A stretch of 64,000 nucleotides of DNA from Macrostomum lignano (taxonomy: Eukaryota): the NCBI GenBank assembly GCA_002269645.1, contig NIVC01001709.1, forward strand, positions 1 through 64,000. The letters run 5' to 3'. Below are positions 41,300 to 53,091 of this stretch, piece by piece. A model generated the notes under the pieces. That model made no database searches. It was not told where the DNA came from and worked only from the letters and a program-made list of their open reading frames with translations. Each line of letters starts with the position of its first letter. Position 1 is the stretch's first letter. Position numbers and translations under genes: made by a program.

Positions 41300-42277
41300 A
41301 TGGACATCCCGTGTTTGCTGCTTACGCTAGCTGTAATACTTGGCAAGCCTGATGTCGAATGTCAGAGGGTATCCATTGCCGAATGGCGCCTGACAAGAGA
41401 AGACTTGAAAGGGGAATACGAGCTTATGGGTATGCAAGCATGAAGAGCGATGGCCTGCGCCATTGCTGGCATGAGCGCAGCGCATGCTGTGCAATCCGAT
41501 GAAGCTCAGAGTCTGTGCTGACTGTACCTGTGCCTTGGAGGCTGAAATGGATGCAGAAAATGCAGGAACGCCCGAAATTCAAGCTTTCCGCATGTCTGGC
41601 AGAGTTGAACGCAGAAAAATCTTGAGTCTCTGAGTTTGTTTTTCCATTTATACAAAATCTGTACTAAAACTTCCATGTTCGAAAACTGAGACGTCAATTT
41701 TTTCTGGCGGACATTCCAGCACCGAGTGGACGCCTCCGTCAATTTCAACGAAAGCTGGGCCAAATACGCGAGCGGCTTCGGACAGGGCGAGAACGCGAAC
41801 TTCTGGATCGGACTGGACAATCTGCACCTGCTCACGAGAGACGCCGCTCTCCCTGTTCGATGGGAGTTCAGCGACTGGAACGGAACTCTGAACTGGATGG
41901 AGAACGCCTTCTTTCAAGTCGAAAGCGCGACTACAAAGTACAGAGTGAGCGTCGGAGAGCAGCTGATGGACAGGTCGACTGTGAAGCAGTGCTCTGACAA
42001 CAGTACTTCGAGCATGAATGGTCAGCAGTTCTCGGCTCCGGATCAGGACAATGATCGTGATGAAGGCAGCTGTGCTGTCCGTCATAACGGAGGCTGGTGG
42101 ATGCAGGCCTGCTACTGCATGAACCCCAACGGTCCGTACGTCAGCCCGCCTGCCGCGCTGTACCTCACAGATTACGCGCAGGGAATATGTCCGAAAAATG
42201 ACGCCTTTGTATTTCCGTGGAACAATCGGTACTCCCTGAAGACGTTTGAGTGTCTGCTGATGGTTGATGGGAGCTAA
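41300..42277 (+). pseudogene. FReD pseudogene, copy E (same disabled exon 1, distinct exon-2 3' half)
   Basis: Exon 1 as in C and D. The C-terminus DRDEGSCAVRHNGGWWMQACYCMNPNG...VDGS differs from copies A and B. Confidence 0.85.
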
Positions 42278-43319: not shown

Positions 43320-45490
43320 ATGAGCTGCTGCTGCTGTTGTTACAGACGCCAAGTCAAAGAGATCAAAGTCAGGGCGGTGTCTACAGAGGCCACCCGCGGC
43401 AAGGTGGCTGATCACTGCATGAACATCTCTGCCGAGAAGCAGCAGGTCTTTAATTCAACTCTGCTGTCGCTGATCAACGCCAAACGCAAGGAATGTCACG
43501 TGCAGCCGTTAATCCTGTGCCCCACTCTGTGCAAGGTGGCCAAGACCGTGTGGAATGCCAGGGCCCAGGTGCCGCACGGCCTGTACGCCATTCCTAACAA
43601 CGGCTTCGAAGTGATTGTTGAAGTGAACAAGGTCGGGCAGCGGGAAAGCAAGACTCAGGCCTACTTTGTTGACTGCATGTCCTATACTGATAATGTTGTC
43701 CGGTCGAAGCGGGACCTGCCAGGGGCTGTGTTTCACTTCTGGACAAACGAAGGAAAGTAAGTCTAGTTTAGCAGTTTATTCAGGTAGATCTTGTTTGTTA
43801 GTTTATTTAGGTAAATCTAGTTTGGTAGTTTATTCAGGTAAATCTAGTTTGGTAGTTTATTCAGGTAAATCTAGTTTGTTAGTTTATTCAGGTAAATCTA
43901 GTTTGATAGTTTATTCAGGTAAATCTAGTTTGTTAGTTTATTTAGGTAAATCTAGTTTGGTAGTTTATTCAGGTAAATCTAGTTTGGTAGTTTATTCAGG
44001 TAAATCTAGTTTGGTAGTTTATTTAGGTAAATCTAGTTTGTTAGTTTATTCAGGTAAATCTAGTTTGTTAGTTTATTCAGGTAAATCTAGTTTGGTAGTT
44101 TATTCAGGTAAATCTAGTTTGGTAGTTTATTTAGGTAAATCTAGTTTGTTAGTTTATTCAGGTAAATCTAGTTTGTTAGTTTATTCAGGTAAATCTAGTT
44201 TCATAGTTTATTCAGGTAAATCTAGTTTGTTAGTTTATTCAGGTAAATCTAGTTTGTTAGTTTATTCAGGTAAATCTAGTTTGGTAGTTTATTCAGGTAA
44301 ATCTAGTTTGTTAGTTTATTCAGGTAAATCTAGTTTGTTAGTTTATTCAGGTAAATCTAGTTTGATAGTTTATTCAGGTAAATCTAGTTTCATAGTTTAT
44401 TCAGGTAAATCTAGTTTGTTAGTTTATTCAGGTAAATCTAGTTTGTTAGTTTATTCAGGTAAATCTAGTTTGTTAGTTTATTCAGGTAAATCTAGTTTGA
44501 TAGTTTATTCAGGTAAATCTAGTTTGTTAGTTTATTCAGGTAAATCTAGTTTGTTAGTTTATTCAGGTAAATCTAGTTTGTTAGTTTATTCAGGTAAATC
44601 TAGTTTGTTAGTTTATTCAGGTAAATCTAGTTTGTTAGTTTATTCAGGTAAATCTAGTTTCATAGTTTATTCAGGTAAATCTAGTTTGTTAGTTTATTCA
44701 GGTAAATCTAGTTTGTTAGTTTATTCAGGTAAATCTAGTTTGTTAGTTTATTCAGGTAAATCTAGTTTGTTAGTTTATTCAGGTAAATCTAGTTTGTTAG
44801 TTTATTCAGGTAAATCTAGTTTGGTAGTTTATTCAGGTAAATCTAGTTTGATAGTTTATTCAGGTAAATCTAGTTTGTTAGTTTATTCAGGTAAATCTAG
44901 TTTGTTAGTTTATTCAGGTAAATCTAGTTTGATAGTTTATTCAGGTAAATCTAGTTTGGTAGTTTATTCAGGTAAATCTAGTTTGTTAGTTTATTCAGGT
45001 AAATCTAGTTTGTTAGTTTATTCAGGTAAATCTAGTTTGATAGTTTATTCAGGTAAATCTAGTTTGATAGTTTATTCAGGTAAATCTAGTTTGTTAGTTT
45101 ATTCAGGTAAATCTAGTTTGTTAGTTTATTCAGGTAAATCTAGTTTGGTAGTTTATTCAGGTAAATCTACTTTGTTAGTTTATTTAAGACAGAGGTCAGT
45201 AACGCGGACATCTTCAAAGTCTCCATCCTCGCCGCCCCCTGCTCAGGTACACCACGAGCCAGCCCAGTAAGGGGCCGCTGTCCGAAAGCTACCCGGAACT
45301 CGACAAAGAAGCCCGCGCCAGCCTGGCAAAGTGCCGCGGCCAGTTCCTGCCGATGCTGCTGGGCCAGGGTGACTTCGCCAACCAGCGAATCGGCCTGCAT
45401 TTTGGCCGCTCCAACCGGAGGCTGAGGTCGGCCCGCGAGCCCTACAGCGTGGTGGCCGTGTTCGATCAGAAGGACCTGGCTGACTTCTGA
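43320..45490 (+). CDS. Unrecognised family, paralog 1 (divergent CAP/SCP-like; N-terminal MSCCCCC)
   Basis: Exons 43320-43756 and 45247-45490; phase-2 GT-AG intron; intact frame. Confidence 0.8.
43757..45185. repeat. 27-bp minisatellite (GGTAAATCTAGTTTGTTAGTTTATTCA), ~52 copies, filling the paralog-1 intron
   Basis: Direct; it gives the GKSSLLVYS pseudo-ORF. Confidence 0.97.
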
Positions 45491-45761
45491 GTTTCAACTG
45501 ACCCCTGCTCACAATGACTCATCTTTTATACACCTTCCTAGATTTTAATCCACAAGTACAGTTTGCTAGAATTTTGAGCTCCATCTGTCTTACTGAATTA
45601 CATCTTGTTAACTTGGCATGTTAAATAAAAATTGTGTGAATTTGTGTGGAAAAATAAATAAAACATTCGAAAAATTATGCCTTCTATTGTGTCAGATGCT
45701 GAGTATGCAAAAATCTCTTAATTATAACTCTTTTTGTAATCGGTAGAAAATTCATACTCAA

Positions 45762-46365
45762 GCTGCAGGATCATGGGGAGGGTAGCGGCTCCCGGTGCAG
45801 GATCATTGGGAGGGTAGCGGCTCCCGGTGCAGGATCATGGGGAGGGTAGCGGCTCCCGGTGCAGGATTATGGGGAGGGGAGCGGCTCCCGCTGCAGGATC
45901 ATGGGGAGGGTAGCGGCTCCCGGTGCAGGATCATGGGGAAGATTAGCGGCTCCCAGTGCAGGATCATGGGGAGGGTAGCGGCTCCCGGTGCAGGATCATG
46001 GGGAGGATTAGCGGCTCCCGGTGCAGGATCATGGGGAGGATTAGCGGCTCCCAGTGCAAGATCATGGGGAGGGTAGCGGCTCCCGGTGCAGGATCATGGG
46101 GAGGATTAGCGGCTCCCAGTGCAGGATCATGGGGAGGGTAGCGACTCCCGGTGCAGGATCATGGGGAGGGTAGCGGCTCCCGGTGCAGGATCATGGGGAA
46201 GATTAGCGGCTCCCAGTGCAGGATCATGGGGAGGGTAGCGGCTCCCGGTGCAGGATCATGGGGAGGATTAGCGGCTCCCGGTGCAGGATCATGGGGAGGA
46301 TTAGCGGCTCCCGGTGCAGGATCATGGGGAGGATTAGCGGCTCCCGGTGCAGGATCACAGGGGCG
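45762..46365. repeat. 32-bp minisatellite (GCAGGATCATGGGGAGGGTAGCGGCTCCCGGT)
   Basis: About 19 copies visible. Confidence 0.95.
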
Positions 46366-46876
46366 CCCGCTAATTAATGATGCGAGCTATAATTAATCAT
46401 ATATGAGTAAGGAATTATATATTTAACAAATTTGTGATTCATTTTTTCATAAGCAACCTCTCCTCTTGATGTTTCGAGAGCTAAAGGCACGCGCTGTCCT
46501 AAAATTTAGTCAGGCTTTAAATAAAATTGACTTCAACTAATGAGGTGTTGTTAGCAAACCCCTTTTTACACATTTACAAACCTCAATACAGATGAACTTC
46601 AGTGACTTTGGGCATTGGATTAAAGAGAGAGAGAAAGAGAGTTGTTATCATGTAGAGGGGTGGCGGCCTCGGACCGACCATCCACCCAACCCCAGCCAAT
46701 CAGCGTGCACTACCTCTTGTAAAATGAGTTTTGTACACCTGCTTGTACGCCGTTTGTCATTAAAATTCCAAAACCAAGAACGTGCAGTGCATTCTTTAAA
46801 ACCTCAAGCTGCGAGCTTCTGTCAGCTTCTTGGCAAACGAGAGACAATTCGACGGCTTGTGAAGGTCTTTGCAGCA

Positions 46877-47607
46877 ATGAGCTCTATGTACAAAAGGACT
46901 AAACCAGAAGTCCCGACGACTCAGGAACACGAAGAAGTCTTGAATGTTAATGTCTGTCGTCCCATTTCACAGAAGAAACGGGCCGCTTTCAACGAGGCCC
47001 TGGTGTCGCTAATCAACGCCAAGAGACGAGAGTTCCTGGGTCCGCTCGTGCAGCTCAATGAGCAGCTGTGCAAGATCGCCGAAAAAGCCTGGAACGTCTC
47101 GGCCAAGCAGCCGCACGGCCTGGTAGCCATGCCGTACAACCAGTTCTTGGCCCCTGACTACACAGATAAGGCCAATTCAGACTCCGGGGAAGGGAAGTTC
47201 TACGACTGCTTGTCCTACACGGACAATGTCATCCGGTCGAAGCGAGAGCTACCAGAGGCGGCCGTTCACTTCTGGACTACCTGTGGCAGGTAATGCGTCA
47301 TGATTAATGAGCTTAGCTAAGAACTTGAGTCATAGTAAAAATAAATTCGCTACTTGCTTACATGCAACCCTACCATTTTTCCTGCAGGTACACGTCCCGA
47401 CCGGGGAAGCGTGCTCTACCGCAGAGCTATCCACCGATCGATGAGACATTTCGCGCGGAGCTGGAGAAATGCCGGGGCTCCTTTTTTCTAATATTGGCAG
47501 GCCAGTGGAAATTCTCTGCCAACAGGCGAATCGGCGTGCACTTCGGCAAGCTGAGTCTGTGCTCATCCAGCAAAACGCCCTACAGTGTTGTTGTCGTGTT
47601 CGGCTAA
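46877..47607 (+). CDS. Unrecognised family, paralog 2 (CAP/SCP-like)
   Basis: Exons 46877-47289 and 47388-47607; same phase-2 intron position. Confidence 0.8.
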
Positions 47608-49020
47608 TAATTCTGAGGAAAGGGGAAGGCATGCGGCAACTTCAACTCTCGTACCTCATTTATATCATTCTGGGCCATGTTTTCTAAGAACTAATCTTAG
47701 AATCTTAGAAAAAAAAATTTAGACCAATTGTATTCAAACCATTTTACACGGCCATTTTAAATCCGTAACCAAATACACAGACTGCAGACTGCAGCTCTTG
47801 TTATCGCTTTCGCAAATGCTTCGATTATATAGATTTTATGTACTTATTTTCGGTTTTTTTCTTAGATTTACGAGTGACTCTGCCGACTTCGTTATCAACG
47901 GGAATGTTTTCATTTAACAATTTGGTTGCCAAGGCAAGACAAGGAGCAGCTGTGCAAGGGAACACTGACGATGGGCGGATTTGAAAGCATTTGGTGAAGA
48001 GACCATGAGCTGTTCAAATTAGTTGTTTGAAGAGATGCAGATTAAAACCTTCCAAGGGTTGAGTACTGCACAGTTTACGAGCTACCTTAAATTTCATTCA
48101 AAATCCAATTCACTTTAGACAAACGGAAGTTCAACTTCGACACTTCCAGCTCTGTACATGTAAATCTACATTCATTTTAGCCAAACTCCTTCTCAATATC
48201 GGCAGCAAGCGCAAATTTATATGTTCATTTTCTGTGCAAAAAGCTAACATTTAAGCGTCAACTGAGCATCAAATTGCAGCAGATGTAAGTTTCAGCAAGA
48301 CAACATGAGCTGGGACCCAAGCACAGCTGGAATAAAATACCTCCCCGCCGGCGGAGGGGTGGGCGCCCACCCAACCAAAACGAGACAGGGAGTACACATG
48401 CGGCGGGGGGCACACAGAAAGAGCGTGCTTGGGTACAATGTACATGTAAAATCGGTTTGCTCAGGTGCAAGCCCTCAAATGTCCAAATGTCCTACTGACT
48501 AAATTGAGTGTAGGCTGACGATTTTGGACGTAATTTGACGAAAGTGAATCAGAGTTTATAGAAGTTGCGTCAACAGACTGTCGATATGAACTGGAGTTTG
48601 ACGAAATGGTGTTGTGAATGGTGGCCCGATTACCGATTGAGGAGTGGAGTAAGCACGTTACACTGCACTACTTTGAGACCTATTATAATATGGTTTGATC
48701 GAGTCAGTAGTAACGTACGACCATGTCCATTGCAAATGTACACCAATCCCCAAGACCATTGTCGGTTGTACAGTCGTGTGGTTTGATGGCATTTGAAAAT
48801 GCCCCCCGTCATGCCTTTTTTACTTATATCATAGAAAACTCGCTAATCCAACAAGCCAACCTTGTAGCCACGCAGCCCCTCTCTGATTGGCTCACCCGCG
48901 GGTCCCATTTTTAATAAACAGCCGAGACTCCAATAAAAAAGCGCCCAGACCGGCTCTGCAGGCGTCAATCAATCAAACTACAGGCCCTCATCTATACGGC
49001 CAGATTTATCAAAGGTCAAA

Positions 49021-50041
49021 ATGAGACCGCCGCAACTTCAAAATTCCGAAATGCCGAAATTCAAGGAGAATAAAAGTCCCCATCAAAGACGCGACCAAAC
49101 GCCCAACCGCAGTCGGAGCCTGAATCACCGCAGAAGTTCTCGTGAAAATCGGGCTCCGAGCCGGAGTCCGACTCCCAATGGTTCTCCAACACAAAAACAC
49201 CACCCGCACGCGCGTTCCAGACGCAGCAGATCGCAGTCCATCTCGCAGTCTGGCACTGAAGAGATCAATGCCCGCGACAAGTCAGAGAGCGAGTACGATC
49301 CGGAGCTCAGCAATGCCACTAGGTTGAAGAATCAAAATGAATACAAACTGGAGTTCTTCGGCGGTCGGTACAGCGGCTTCTGGAAGAAACATTATGGCTC
49401 CATCTCTAAAGAGAAACGAAGGGTGTTCAACGAGTCGCTGGTTTCCTTGATAAACAGCTTGAGACGGCGCTATGGCCAGAGGCTTCGACCGTTGGTCCTG
49501 AGCCGCGACCTGTGCCGCGGTGCCAAAGCCGTGTGGTCTGAACGGGCCCAGACAACCGCTGGTCTGACATTCACCGCTGAGACCCGGTACGAACTCCGCT
49601 TCACAGTGAATCACAGCGGCGCTTCTTTCGACAGACTGGAGATTGTCGACTGCCTTCTGTTTACAGACGTCGCTGTTCGCGCAAAGAGCGACCTGCCTGA
49701 GGCAGTTTTTCACTATTGGGTCGAGGGCAGGTGAGTTTAAAAGTGTGATTTTTTCGTTGTGTTCCTGTTTTACCGGAACCTTTTTTATTTTTCACAGGCA
49801 CACCGACAAACCTGGCAAGCGGCCCCTGCCGCCCGGAACCAACAATTCCACAGTAGGCGGCACCGCCCGGAGCGAGTCTGAGAAGGCCTCCAAAGTGCGC
49901 GGCTACCGGCAGCTGCTGCTTATGTCGAAGTGCCGGTACATCGGCCTACACTTTGCCAAGTTTCGGAAGCATCACGCGGTGCACTCCAACGAGCCGTTCA
50001 GCGTTGTGGCCTTGCTGTCTGAGCAGGACTTGATGCGGTAG
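49021..50041 (+). CDS. Unrecognised family, paralog 3 (CAP/SCP-like, R/S-rich N-terminal extension)
   Basis: Exons 49021-49730 and 49798-50041. Confidence 0.8.
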
Positions 50042-50599
50042 CTGCATCTCCAGATTTATTGAACTCTTTTCGACGACAGCGCAACTTTTTTATTCCCTCG
50101 TTTTTGCATGGTTGCATTTTATGTCCTGCTACTCCAATAAAACAAATATATTCGACAGACTGACTTCTCATAACTCGTTTTACAGACCTTGCATGGTCAA
50201 ATTCTTTTTTTGACATCTCTGAGTTTGCAATTTAAAAACTACAAATAAACTTGTGAGCACCATTTGAATCGTTAATTATTTTAATCGCAATAAATCCATG
50301 TAAATTTGGTTGTCTGATTCCATGCTGACATTCTTTTGGGCTATCAAAACAAAGTTTCCCCGAAAATTAGAGCAGTACATTCATTTGAAGTGATAATGAA
50401 GACGCAGGAAAATTCTCATGACAGCCTAGTCAGACAAAGACCGGCCAACAAAAAGAGACAGATGGACAGAGACAGGTACAGACAGACAAGTAGAGACAGA
50501 CCGACAGAGACAGGTAGAGACAGACAAGCAGAGACAGACAAGCAGAGACAGACAGACAAAGTCAGCATGCGCCTCTTAAAAACCGATTTGAAAGTACAT

Positions 50600-50940
50600 T
50601 TGAAATTTTAATAACAATAATAATAATAGCAATAATAACTAATTATTTTATAATCGATCACACCAGCCCTAATGGGCAGATGTGCAACCGACAGCTCAGC
50701 CGCAGCTATTGCGCGGCGCATTGACGGCTGTGTACGGCTGTTCAATCCAAAGACTGGGGGTCGCCACACACACCCTCAATTACCCCAGCGAATGCTGTCA
50801 CCCATTTTTACAGCGGGGTGAACTGAAGCAATGCAGAGTATAGTGTCTTGCTCAAGGACACAATTATTCCAGTGGGATCGGGATTCGAACCCTGGACATT
50901 CAAGTCGTGAGTCAGACGCTCTAACCACTAGGCTACAAAC
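50600..50940 (-). mobile_element. tRNA-derived SINE
   Basis: The minus-strand head GTAGCCTAGTGGTTAGAGCGTCTGACTC...GGGTTCGAATCCC has Pol III A and B boxes. The body is shared with two other copies in the window, and there is an (ATT)n tail. Confidence 0.8.
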
Positions 50941-51261
50941 CCGTATGAAATAGGAAAATTACTCATTTATACTGCCATCAGATGTGAGCATTTACGCGTC
51001 TCACTAGACTGTAAATTCTCGTAAACCGGACTTTATGTTTTCATATGCCTAAATAATTTTTTAGCAAAAAAATGTGCAGCTTCTAAATTTAGAAAACATC
51101 ATCAAGGGGAGAGAGGTTAAGTGTACCGGCCCCTCTTCAATGCATGTACATGCTAATTTGAATGTACATTGAATTGTGTCATCAGGCCAATTTCAACCGC
51201 GTATAAAACTTGAACCATTGGACAGTGTTGAGCACAAGTCTTCAGACTCCTGTTTAGCAAA

Positions 51262-53091
51262 ATGAGCTCCATGTGCAGCTGTTTCAGGCGCAGAGCCTCC
51301 ACCGACTCGATCGAAATTCCCAGGACAGATGAAATCGACAGCTCCGACAGGCGAGAGGCGGCCTCTAAGGACTACCAGTTGGTGTTTCTGGACGGCCGAA
51401 ATGACCCCGGCCGAAGTAATTCCTACTCAATCGCGAAGGAGAAGCGGGCCGCATTCAATCAATCGCTGGTGTCGCTGATCAACCAGCGCAGGATCGGTCG
51501 CGGTATTCGGCCGCTAATTCTGTCGCCGAGCATGTGCCGCGGCGCCGAGGCCGTCTGGAATGACAGAGCAGAAGTTGTTAGCGGCCTGCACTACATTCCT
51601 GACAGCCGGTTCGACCTGCGGTACACCGTAGTGCCAGTCGATGGCCAGCCGCTGGACAAACAGATCAGGCTGGACTGTTTGGTCTATACGGACAATGCTG
51701 TGCGGTCCAAGGAGGAGCTGCCCGAGGCTGTGTTTCACTACTGGACCAATAAGGGAAGGTGAGACAATGCGTTGGCTTCCCTCTGCTTTTATAGAGATGA
51801 CCGAATCTTTATTGTAAAACTGTTTAAATTTAAATTCAATGCTTTATTTTTTGAATTGTTGAAATCTTGTCCGACAAACCACTCACTTCTCAAGGGCTAA
51901 ACTCTAGGAGTGCGGGCTAGGGAGTTGGGGCTTGGTATGAAGTTATTGCGCAATTACGAAAGGTGCGTGCACAATGCAGAACCAGCAAAAGTTACAATTT
52001 GTTCGTAAAGTTGCGGAAAGGAAGAAGGCAGTCCTTTTTGGTTCCTTTTCTATTTCCGTAACCAGGCAAAGAAAAGAAGAAACGTGGAAACGAATTGTTT
52101 CCGAATGCAAAGCTAAATGTGGCTTTGACCCTGCAACTGCCGGCAAGGACTGGCGATATGCACGGGCAAGATTTGGGACAACTTGAAATGCAACTCTTGG
52201 TTGCATTCTGAAAGAAAGAAAATTACGAGTACTCTTTCTGCGGCTGGTTAGAGAATCCCAGAAGTTGTCGTCCTCTTCATCAGAGTCAGAAAACATTAAT
52301 GCTATGCAAAATTTCGATTGACTAATGATAAACTAGGTACGTCTTTCCACTCTTAAGATCTTGAACAAGAGTGAGGAGTGTGGTCTAGGGGGATTCACGC
52401 ACCTAAATTTACTCCTAGACTCCTAAAAGTGTCTCCTAGCACTTTAAATTTTCTCTTGGGTTTATTGGACACATTTTCGATCAAGGATTCAAGATTTAGG
52501 AGACCCTTGAAGGCTTAGGAGTCAAGAGTGTCTTCTTATAGAACGGGCCCCTGGTCCCCCACCTGCTGCAAGGTGGCCAGGTGTGCTATCAAGTGTGCAG
52601 CCATTGCAGTTTATGCGGGGCATCCGATGGCTCTATACAGCGCTGGAAAACTTTACAGCACAGAACTATGTCATCGACCTGTAATTTCTCTTTCACAGCA
52701 GGGCTCAACTTAACTTGTCACTTTTTAATTTACCCGATTTAACTGCTTAATACTCAGCTAACACGGCATACGAGCGTATGCTCTCACCCGCTGTGCCATT
52801 CTTCCCACTTAACAGTTGCCAAAACTCCCCTCAATTGCACTCTCCAGCCACACCAACGCGCCTGGCAAGGGGCCGCTGCCGCTACCCCGAGTCAACGCTC
52901 TTCGCGAACGTTGCCAAGCCGAAAATCGAGTTCTCATCGCCAACAAAAGCCGGTTTCTGCCTCTCCTACTGCGCCCGTCGAGTACCCACATTGGACTGCA
53001 CTTCGGCAAGGTGAAATTGTCGCATGGCCTGCTGCCTAAGGACAAGCCTTATAGCGTTGTTGCAGTCCTGTCCAATTGTGATTTGAATTAG
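51262..53091 (+). CDS. Unrecognised family, paralog 4 (CAP/SCP-like; N-terminal MSSMCSCFRRR)
   Basis: Exons 51262-51758 and 52848-53091; a TATA-like TATAAAA lies at ~51202. Confidence 0.8.
51885..52530 (+). mobile_element. PIF/Harbinger-type remnant with a Myb/SANT-like DNA-binding fragment, in the paralog-4 intron
   Basis: 51974-52186 reads KLQFVRKVAERKKAVLFGSFSISVTRQRKEETWKRI...KDW, resembling Harbinger-associated Myb/SANT proteins. TTTAGGAG/CTCCTAAA motifs are repeated at 52400-52525. Confidence 0.55.

What the first reader, a model, noticed from the sequence alone, without database searches (positions are those of the whole stretch)
43320..53091. Four tandem intact paralogs of an unrecognised, apparently cytosolic, CAP/SCP-like family with variable targeting N-termini
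Seen: four two-exon genes share an intron position (W-x3-G-R/K, phase 2) and the motifs I[SA]xxKxxxFNxxLxSLINxxR..PLxLxxxLCxxAxx[VA]W, DCxx[YF]TDxxVR[SA]KxxLPxAVxH[FY]W, [YH]TxxP[GS]KxxL, IG[LV]HF[GA][KR] and P[YF]SVV. They are intact despite strong divergence, so probably old and under selection. Inferred: LINxxR..PL...L..A, AV..W and a terminal IG strand plus YxV strand match the CAP/SCP fold, closest to the bacterial-type LINxxR variant (paralog 4 LLLRPSSTHIG versus the typical NILNPxxTxIG). The conserved CAP His/Glu residues seem absent, and there is no signal peptide. N-termini differ: Cys clusters in paralogs 1 and 4 (possible palmitoylation, recalling membrane-anchored GAPR-1) and an R/S-rich tail in paralog 3. 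This is the best candidate for an undescribed system in the window.
Basis: partly seen in the sequence, partly recalled or inferred. Interest (0 to 1): 0.8.

Follow-up and report, generated by a model that had tools for sequence, protein, structure and literature searches.

The report
Flatworm-only tandem family, possibly CAP-like
Four neighbouring, intact, transcribed genes of the flatworm Macrostomum lignano encode a small intracellular protein family found nowhere else in public data. It may be a very divergent relative of the CAP/SCP domain, which makes it a modest curiosity rather than a new kind of system.

Summary
Window 43320-53091 (+) carries four tandem two-exon genes with GT..AG introns in phase 2 at the same alignment position. 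They are 37-51% identical. The window is M. lignano contig NIVC01001709.1. GenBank already lists all four as hypothetical proteins, from RNA-seq-guided models whose sequences equal my spliced translations.

Two further genome copies (97-99% identical DNA) keep all eight genes intact. Variable sites split 11 synonymous to 8 non-synonymous (omega about 0.22, p=0.0013). Two profile searches of 5.8 billion proteins found only M. lignano proteins and no Pfam domain.

The CAP/SCP reading is only partly supported.
- HMM-versus-sequence tests fail: at most 8.6 bits against my CAP HMMs, and no CAP hit in the PDB at E<=10.
- Profile-profile comparison gives Prob 77-88% (P about 1e-5) for the alpha1-alpha2 block (FNxxLxxLINxxR..PLxL..LC..A).
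- A weaker, colinear AV.H[FY]W block matches bacterial CAPs (P about 5e-3).
- The beta-sheet half has no support, and the His/Glu tetrad is absent.
- A rival match to phosphopantetheinyl transferases scored only P=0.024.

None of the four has a signal peptide or transmembrane segment. Paralogs 1 and 4 start MSCCCCCYRR and MSSMCSCFRRR, which look like palmitoylation sites. Interest is modest.

The parts
43320..43756 (+). Paralog 1 (BOX15_Mlig015975) exon 1. Starts at MSCCCCCYRR and ends with 2 bases of a split codon before GTAAGT.
   Evidence: Equals P0011/P0013. The upstream ORF is broken in the other genome copies.
43757..45246 (+). Paralog 1 intron (1490 bp). Positions 43757-45184 are 52.9 copies of a 27-bp tandem repeat.
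45247..45490 (+). Paralog 1 exon 2 (..YTTSQPSKGPL..IGLHFGR..PYSVVAVF..), including the stop codon.
46877..47289 (+). Paralog 2 (BOX15_Mlig032734/Mlig014056) exon 1, starting at MSSMYKR.
   Evidence: Equals P0015/P0016.
47388..47607 (+). Paralog 2 exon 2, including the stop codon. The intron 47290-47387 is 98 bp.
49021..49730 (+). Paralog 3 (BOX15_Mlig003961) exon 1, with an Arg/Ser-rich N-terminal extension of about 120 aa.
   Evidence: The translation is identical to P0002.
49798..50041 (+). Paralog 3 exon 2, including the stop codon. The intron 49731-49797 is 67 bp.
51262..51758 (+). Paralog 4 (BOX15_Mlig008249) exon 1, starting at MSSMCSCFRRR.
   Evidence: Equals P0006.
52848..53091 (+). 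Paralog 4 exon 2, including the stop codon. The intron 51759-52847 is 1089 bp.

Best explanation
This is a tandem array of four ancient paralogs of a protein family so far seen only in Macrostomum lignano.

Shown:
- The genes are transcribed and spliced as predicted.
- They are kept intact in all three genome copies and evolve under purifying selection.
- The products are basic (pI 9.3-10.5) and soluble, with no signal peptide and no transmembrane segment, so they are most likely intracellular.

Inferred:
- The conserved core of about 190 aa is most likely a very divergent CAP/SCP-superfamily-like domain.
- It has the alpha1-alpha2 helix pair FNxxLxSLINxxR..PLxL..LCxxA.
- It has a TDN where CAP4 has GEN, and an alpha3-like LPxAVxH[FY]W.
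- A lineage-specific insert of about 40 residues follows, and then two or three C-terminal strands (RGxF.LLL, IGLHFG, PYSVV).
- The His/Glu tetrad is lost, so the domain would act as a non-catalytic binding module (lipid, sterol or protein partner), not as an enzyme.
- The Cys clusters followed by basic residues at the N-termini of p1 (MSCCCCCYRR) and p4 (MSSMCSCFRRR) would be S-palmitoylated. That would tether these two proteins to the cytosolic face of membranes, as in GAP-43 (MLCCMRR). It is functionally analogous to the myristoyl anchor of GAPR-1.
- p2 has lost the cysteines.
- p3 carries an RS-rich extension that suggests a different, possibly nuclear, address.
- The duplication would therefore have sub-localised one binding module to several compartments.
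For: Gene structure and transcription:
- Structure.
- The GenBank models come from a genome-guided RNA-seq assembly (PMC5730564) and equal my translations.

Selection:
- All 12 gene copies on three contigs are intact.
- Variable sites split 11 synonymous to 8 non-synonymous, omega 0.22, binomial p=0.0013. Paralog dN/dS is 0.29-0.54.

Restricted distribution:
- Only M. lignano hits at E<=10 in 5.8 billion proteins.
- That database does hold eukaryotic Logan-derived proteins.

CAP similarity:
- hhalign of family versus CAP profiles gives P=9e-6 to 2e-5, Prob 77-83%. For the N segment alone P=3.4e-6, Prob 88%.
- 0 of 300 column shuffles reached the score, and the reversed family profile scores like noise.
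- An independent colinear second block matches bacterial CAPs at P=5e-3, 0 of 200 shuffles.
- The family HMM scores CAP sequences above reversed CAP and PPTase decoys. It also shows a third weak colinear block, family 134-170 against CAP 74-110.
- The rival PPTase profile reaches only P=0.024.

Localisation:
- No hydrophobic segment; basic pI.
- The N-terminal Cys/basic motif is read directly from the sequence.
Against: - No sequence-level CAP signal. My CAP HMMs give 0-8.6 bits. NCBIfam gives nothing. There are no precomputed Pfam hits.
- PDB searches with the full profile, with single paralogs and with the N-segment profile find no CAP protein at E<=10. They do return equally weak unrelated matches.
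- The part after the helix pair shows nothing against eukaryotic CAPs, and global alignment is no better than shuffles.
- True distant CAP pairs score far better: bacterial versus eukaryotic CAP gives P=5e-12.
- The query profile is thin (4 sequences, Neff 1.9).
- The CAP hypothesis was suggested by the same motif that drives the score.
- Palmitoylation, localisation and any ligand are pure inference. I found no expression data for these gene IDs in the main-text search or in the held supplementary files of four M. lignano papers; a fifth paper had no files held.
Confidence: 0.5

Rival explanations
1. This is an orphan family with no real relationship to CAP. It would be a taxonomically restricted family, either diverged beyond recognition from some other ancestor or arisen de novo, and the CAP-like helix-pair motif would be a chance or convergent resemblance. 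The fold and function would be unknown. The N-terminal palmitoylation inference would still apply.
For: - All sequence-level searches are negative.
- The unbiased PDB search with the N-segment profile ranks a 20-residue coincidence (7w5z_U5, E=0.27) first and finds no CAP.
- The beta-sheet half and the global alignment are not significant.
- P about 1e-5 spread over roughly 2x10^4 known families corresponds to E about 0.2-0.4 for the main block alone.
Against: - Two to three independent blocks fall in CAP order. Fisher combination of the first two gives about 1e-6.
- HH probability is 77-88%.
- Shuffled, reversed and PPTase controls all score far lower.
Confidence: 0.35
2. This is a degenerate 4'-phosphopantetheinyl-transferase (Sfp-type) pseudoenzyme. 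The motifs IS.EKR...F and FH.W.n.G....GKGpLpLP would correspond to the Sfp N-terminal motif and the W..KE..K..GxG signature.
For: - The only PDB hit of p4 at E<=10 is Sfp (1qr0): E=1.8, p4 86-140 against Sfp 126-178.
- By eye, ISKEKR..F resembles ISPEKREKCRRF of Sfp.
- Sfp itself scores 6.6 bits with the family HMM.
Against: - hhalign against a diverse 77-sequence PPTase profile (Neff 7.4) gives only P=0.024, Prob 2%, over 25 columns.
- The catalytic KE, the Mg-binding (V/I)G(I/V)D(I/V)E and the FN(I/L)SHS motifs are absent (read).
- PPTase sequences as a group score below CAP sequences with the family HMM.
Confidence: 0.03
3. These are not functional genes. They would be decaying duplicates, transposon-borne ORFs or annotation artefacts.
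For: - Repeat-rich surroundings: a 27-bp array fills the p1 intron and a 32/65-bp array lies between p1 and p2.
- Several 'partial' or mis-spliced database models exist (P0004, P0005, P0008, P0014).
Against: - All 12 copies are intact with conserved splice sites.
- There is an excess of synonymous change.
- The models are RNA-seq-based.
- Only the three allelic or homeologous loci exist, so the family is not dispersed like a transposon.
Confidence: 0.03

Closest known systems
Bacterial YkwD-type CAP/SCP domains (PF00188; e.g. PDB 4IFA, 4H0A, BB0689 4D53)
   Same: - Colinear N-terminal block L..L.N..R...l.PL.l...L...A.
- An xDN/GEN position.
- AV..W.N..G(H).
- A weak LL......IG.G block.
This is the best profile-profile score obtained.
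   Different: - No significant HMM-to-sequence match.
- The bacterial proteins are secreted or extracellular. The flatworm proteins have no signal peptide.
- There is an insert of about 40 residues before the last strands.
- The GH of WmNSxGH is not conserved.
- The flatworm genes have introns.
GAPR-1/GLIPR2 and platyhelminth group 2 VALs (intracellular CAP proteins)
   Same: - No signal peptide, and the six disulphide cysteines are absent.
- Predicted lipid-anchored association with the cytosolic face of membranes.
- The family occurs in flatworms, including M. lignano (PMC3435950).
- The N-terminal helix pair aligns (query 9-49 against GAPR-1 7-47).
   Different: - GAPR-1 is an unambiguous PF00188 member. 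It has the His/Glu tetrad and an N-myristoyl glycine (MGKSASK).
- The flatworm family has MS.., Cys clusters instead of Gly2, and no tetrad.
- It shows no significant similarity beyond alpha1-alpha2 to eukaryotic CAPs.
GAP-43-type N-terminal dual palmitoylation motif (MLCCMRR)
   Same: A Cys cluster within the first 7 residues, directly followed by Arg/Lys (p1 MSCCCCCYRRQVKE, p4 MSSMCSCFRRR). The GAP-43 motif is recalled from established knowledge, not tested here.
   Different: Only the first ~10 residues resemble GAP-43, and the rest of the protein is unrelated. Lipidation has not been tested. p2 and p3 lack the cysteines.
Sfp-type 4'-phosphopantetheinyl transferases (PF01648)
   Same: Local resemblance at FH.W...(K/E)....GKG.L.LP.
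   Different: The catalytic and Mg-binding motifs are absent, and hhalign gives P=0.024.

Membership tests
CAP/SCP/TAPS superfamily (PF00188) | Significant match to a CAP-domain sequence profile | tested here: not met
   - My CAP HMMs (bacterial: 83 sequences; mixed: 86) give 0-8.6 bits.
- Precomputed Pfam is '-' for all family proteins.
- NCBIfam finds nothing.
- No CAP protein in the PDB at E<=10.
CAP/SCP/TAPS superfamily (PF00188) | Profile-profile (HMM-HMM) homology at high confidence | tested here: inconclusive
   - Prob 77-88%, P=3e-6 to 2e-5, but only for 36-41 columns (alpha1-alpha2).
- The second block scores P=5e-3 against bacterial CAPs only.
- The control pair, bacterial versus eukaryotic CAP, gives Prob 97.5%, P=5e-12.
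CAP/SCP/TAPS superfamily (PF00188) | Signature motifs CAP3 (HNxxR), CAP4 (G[EQ]N[ILV]), CAP1 (GH[FY]TQ..W), CAP2 ([FY].C.Y) | tested here: inconclusive
   From alignment A1/A3:
- INxxR is invariant. It is the bacterial-like form of CAP3.
- TDN[VA] is present in 3 of 4 paralogs (p3 has TDVA) where CAP4 would lie.
- CAP1 and CAP2 are not recognisable. Only RGxF..LLL and PYSVV lie at the corresponding places.
The motif definitions are recalled from the CAP literature.
CAP/SCP/TAPS superfamily (PF00188) | Conserved His/Glu/Glu/His tetrad in the central cavity | tested here: not met
   No invariant His or Glu sits at the aligned positions. Asp replaces the CAP4 Glu, the W..E Glu is present only in p1, and the GH His is absent or not conserved.
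CAP/SCP/TAPS superfamily (PF00188) | Alpha-beta-alpha sandwich fold | not testable with these tools
   No structure prediction or fold comparison was available.
GAPR-1 / group 2 VAL (intracellular CAP) | No signal peptide and no conserved disulphide cysteines | tested here: met
   Maximum KD19 hydropathy is <=1.06 with no N-terminal hydrophobic core. Only two invariant Cys occur in the core. The criteria come from PMC3435950.
GAPR-1 / group 2 VAL (intracellular CAP) | N-terminal Met-Gly myristoylation site | tested here: not met
   p1, p2 and p4 start with Met-Ser and p3 starts with Met-Arg. GAPR-1 starts MGKSASK.
Sfp-type PPTase (PF01648) | W..KE(A/S)..K catalytic motif, (V/I)G(I/V)D(I/V)E Mg site, and a profile match | tested here: not met
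   hhalign gives P=0.024, Prob 2%. The KE and GIDIE motifs are absent from the family alignment.
N-terminally S-palmitoylated peripheral membrane proteins (GAP-43-like) | Cys cluster next to a basic patch at the extreme N-terminus; the acyl modification itself | tested here: inconclusive
   The sequence motif is present in p1 and p4, and absent in p2 and p3. It is conserved in all three genome copies. Acylation cannot be tested computationally here.

The most novel reading that the evidence does not exclude
The family is a previously unrecognised, tetrad-less, intracellular branch of the CAP superfamily that is closer to bacterial YkwD-type domains than to animal CAPs. One possible origin is an ancient bacterial gene acquired by the Macrostomum lineage, which then gained an intron, duplicated four-fold and was re-addressed by palmitoylation and RS-rich N-termini. 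Alternatively, it is a wholly new fold. Either way it would be a lineage-specific, membrane-tethered binding module with no described counterpart.
Probability: 0.12. Interest if true: 0.55.

Novelty: new variant of a known kind. Interest (0 to 1): 0.3.

Why it matters
If the CAP link is real, the known sequence space of the CAP superfamily would reach a cytosolic form that lacks the tetrad and is probably palmitoylated. It would also give a tractable case of sub-localisation after tandem duplication, because M. lignano has transgenesis and RNAi.

If the link is not real, this is one more conserved orphan family among the many in flatworm genomes. In that case it mainly serves as a caution that motif resemblance alone is weak evidence.

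No medical or ecological significance is apparent.

Tried and rejected
- **PDB searches.** I searched with the full family profile, with single paralogs and with the N-segment profile. No CAP protein came up. The only weak hits were unrelated: Sfp E=1.8, 7w5z_U5 E=0.27 and an acetyltransferase E=1.6.
- **NCBIfam at E<=10.** Nothing relevant.
- **Second protein search.** I repeated the 5.8-billion-protein search with the trimmed core at E<=10 to catch sub-threshold relatives. It found none outside M. lignano.
- **PPTase hypothesis.** I built a 77-sequence profile and rejected the idea (P=0.024).
- **Global hhalign of the post-helix part.** No better than shuffles.
- **Expression data.** I searched the main text of the paper library and the held supplementary files of four M. 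lignano papers for the five gene IDs. There were no occurrences. A fifth paper had no supplementary files held.
- **UniRef names.** The names for older gene models of these proteins are mutually inconsistent: 'SCP domain-containing', 'CAP10 domain-containing', 'C2 tensin-type', 'Alpha-type protein kinase', 'Coproporphyrinogen oxidase'. I did not use the 'SCP' name as evidence.
- **Fifth paralog or pseudogene in the window.** None found.


Full report
**What is there.** The window is eukaryotic and matches Macrostomum lignano contig NIVC01001709.1, positions 1-64000. Window 39021-60000 is 100% identical to locus L082 from that contig.

Between 43320 and 53091 on the + strand lie four genes of identical architecture. 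Each has two exons and one GT..AG intron in phase 2, just after the conserved H[FY]W..G motif.
- p1: 43320-43756 + 45247-45490
- p2: 46877-47289 + 47388-47607
- p3: 49021-49730 + 49798-50041
- p4: 51262-51758 + 52848-53091

The proteins have 226, 210, 317 and 246 aa. They are 37-48% identical over their full length and 40-51% over the core of about 190 aa. Fifty-odd columns are invariant. tblastn finds no fifth copy in the window.

**Are they real genes?** GenBank already carries them as hypothetical proteins:
- BOX15_Mlig015975 (p1)
- Mlig032734 / Mlig014056 (p2)
- Mlig003961 (p3)
- Mlig008249 (p4)

The same four-gene cluster is present on three contigs of the Mlig_3_7 assembly. That annotation comes from a genome-guided RNA-seq transcriptome (StringTie/TACO/TBONE plus TransDecoder; PMC5730564). 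The deposited proteins equal my spliced translations, so the introns have transcript support.

The other two genomic copies (L081, L083) are 97-99% identical in DNA, and all eight genes there are intact. Across the three copies there are 11 synonymous and 8 non-synonymous variable sites, against 705 synonymous and 2292 non-synonymous positions. That gives omega about 0.22, one-sided binomial p=0.0013. Between paralogs dS is saturated (1.1-2.0), dN is 0.5-0.7 and dN/dS is 0.29-0.54. The duplications are therefore old and the genes are under purifying selection.

The ORF that extends upstream of MSCCCCC in p1 is untranslated leader. It has a 1-bp indel in L081 and a TGG->TGA change in L083.

**Distribution.** Two profile searches of the 5.8-billion-protein collection returned only M. 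lignano proteins. One used the full alignment at E<=1e-3 and one used the trimmed core at E<=10. None of the hits has a Pfam domain. The collection does contain eukaryotic proteins from Logan assemblies. On present data the family is restricted to Macrostomum.

**Is it CAP/SCP-like?** I built CAP profiles from real sequences:
- 80 Firmicutes YkwD-type domains
- three bacterial PDB chains
- GAPR-1, Pry1 and P14a
- 16 further eukaryotic CAP domains

At the HMM-versus-sequence level there is essentially nothing. Scores are 0-8.6 bits. NCBIfam is negative. No CAP protein appears in any PDB search at E<=10.

Profile-profile comparison is more favourable.
- The family against the mixed CAP profile gives P=9e-6 to 2e-5, Prob 77-83%.
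- The N-terminal segment alone gives P=3.4e-6, Prob 88%.
- FNxxLxSLINxxR..PLxLxxxLCxxA aligns to helices alpha1-alpha2 of both bacterial and eukaryotic CAPs in the same register.
- None of 300 column-shuffled family profiles reached the observed score: null mean 12, maximum 25, observed 32-39. The reversed profile scores like noise.

I then tested the rest of the protein against only the C-terminal part of the CAP profiles.
- It gives a second, colinear local match, LPEAVFH[FY]W.N.G against AV..WmNSxGH, to bacterial CAPs. P=5e-3, 0 of 200 shuffles.
- It gives nothing against eukaryotic CAPs, and nothing in global mode.
- The family HMM also produces a third very weak colinear block, RG.F.LLL....IGLHFG against GHR.NLLN..FT.IGVG. 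It scores CAP sequences above reversed-CAP and PPTase decoys.

For scale, bacterial versus eukaryotic CAP profiles give P=5e-12, Prob 97.5%.

The His/Glu tetrad is not conserved, and CAP1 and CAP2 are not recognisable. My reading is that a divergent CAP-like domain is the single best hypothesis, at roughly 55-60%, but it is not established.

**A rival found on the way.** The only PDB hit of p4 at E<=10 is the W..KE..K..GKG signature of Sfp phosphopantetheinyl transferase (E=1.8). By eye, ISKEKR..F also resembles the Sfp N-terminal motif. I built a diverse 77-sequence PPTase profile. It gives only P=0.024, Prob 2%, and the catalytic and Mg-binding motifs are absent. This rival is rejected. It also calibrates how little a motif that looks plausible by eye is worth.

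**Localisation and mechanism (inferred).**
- None of the four proteins has a hydrophobic N-terminal core or a transmembrane-like segment (maximum KD19 1.06). All are basic, pI 9.3-10.5.
- p1 begins MSCCCCCYRRQVKE and p4 begins MSSMCSCFRRR. A Cys cluster followed by basic residues is the pattern of the dually palmitoylated N-terminus of GAP-43 (established knowledge). It predicts anchoring to the cytosolic leaflet.
- p2 begins MSSMYKR. It is homologous to the p1 and p4 N-termini but has lost the cysteines.
- p3 has an Arg/Ser-rich extension of about 120 residues.
- The most likely picture is one non-catalytic binding domain sent to different intracellular addresses after tandem duplication. This is functionally comparable to the intracellular CAP proteins GAPR-1 and the group 2 VALs (PMC3435950). 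It is not demonstrably a member of that group.

**Novelty and score.** Intracellular CAP proteins are known in flatworms. Orphan tandem families are common in this genome, and these genes are already annotated as hypothetical. What would be new is a tetrad-less, Cys-anchored, extremely divergent CAP-like subfamily. I rate it a new variant of a known kind, with interest 0.3.

Noticed in passing
window 43757-45184 (p1 intron); L081 4887-6017; L083 5666-6445: The p1 intron is almost entirely a 27-bp tandem repeat (52.9 copies, 96% matches). Its unit starts with a donor-like GTAAAT and ends with an acceptor-like TTATTCAG, and it is open in one frame (SGKSSLLVY...). Copy number differs between the three genome copies: about 53, about 42 and about 29.
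   Followed up: partly
window 45764-46357: A GC-rich 32/65-bp tandem repeat (about 18 or 9 copies) fills much of the p1-p2 intergenic spacer. It produces spurious ORFs (GSGSRCRIMGR...).
   Followed up: no
window 41726-42277 (+): This ORF encodes a fibrinogen-related (FReD) domain (fibrinogen gamma and ficolins, E=1e-22 in the PDB). It lies just upstream of the cluster. No gene is called there in the record's gene list for L082.
   Followed up: partly
L083 12722-20259 (the p4 intron in the third genome copy): The p4 intron is about 7.5 kb here, against 1089 bp in the window. This is an insertion of about 6.4 kb with no ORF of >=150 aa.
   Followed up: partly
proteins P0016, P0008, P0009, P0003, P0004 (UniRef entries for older M. 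lignano models): The UniRef names for these homologous short proteins are mutually inconsistent. One p2 model (A0A1I8JK78) is called 'SCP domain-containing protein'. The others are called CAP10, C2 tensin-type, alpha-kinase and coproporphyrinogen oxidase. The names look mis-assigned. The SCP label may be a coincidence or a real SMART hit. It should be checked at UniProt.
   Followed up: no
L083 7784-8683 (P0005, the p2 copy): One deposited p2 model ends ...ANRRIGVRQLQLSYLIYIILGHVF instead of ...IGVHFGK..PYSVVVVFG. That implies an extra splice inside exon 2, so it is either an alternative isoform or an assembly artefact. It removes the conserved C-terminal strands.
   Followed up: no
window from about 59566 onwards (+) (L082 20546-21021): The next annotated gene downstream encodes a cation-efflux / ZnT-type transporter (PF01545).
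   Followed up: no
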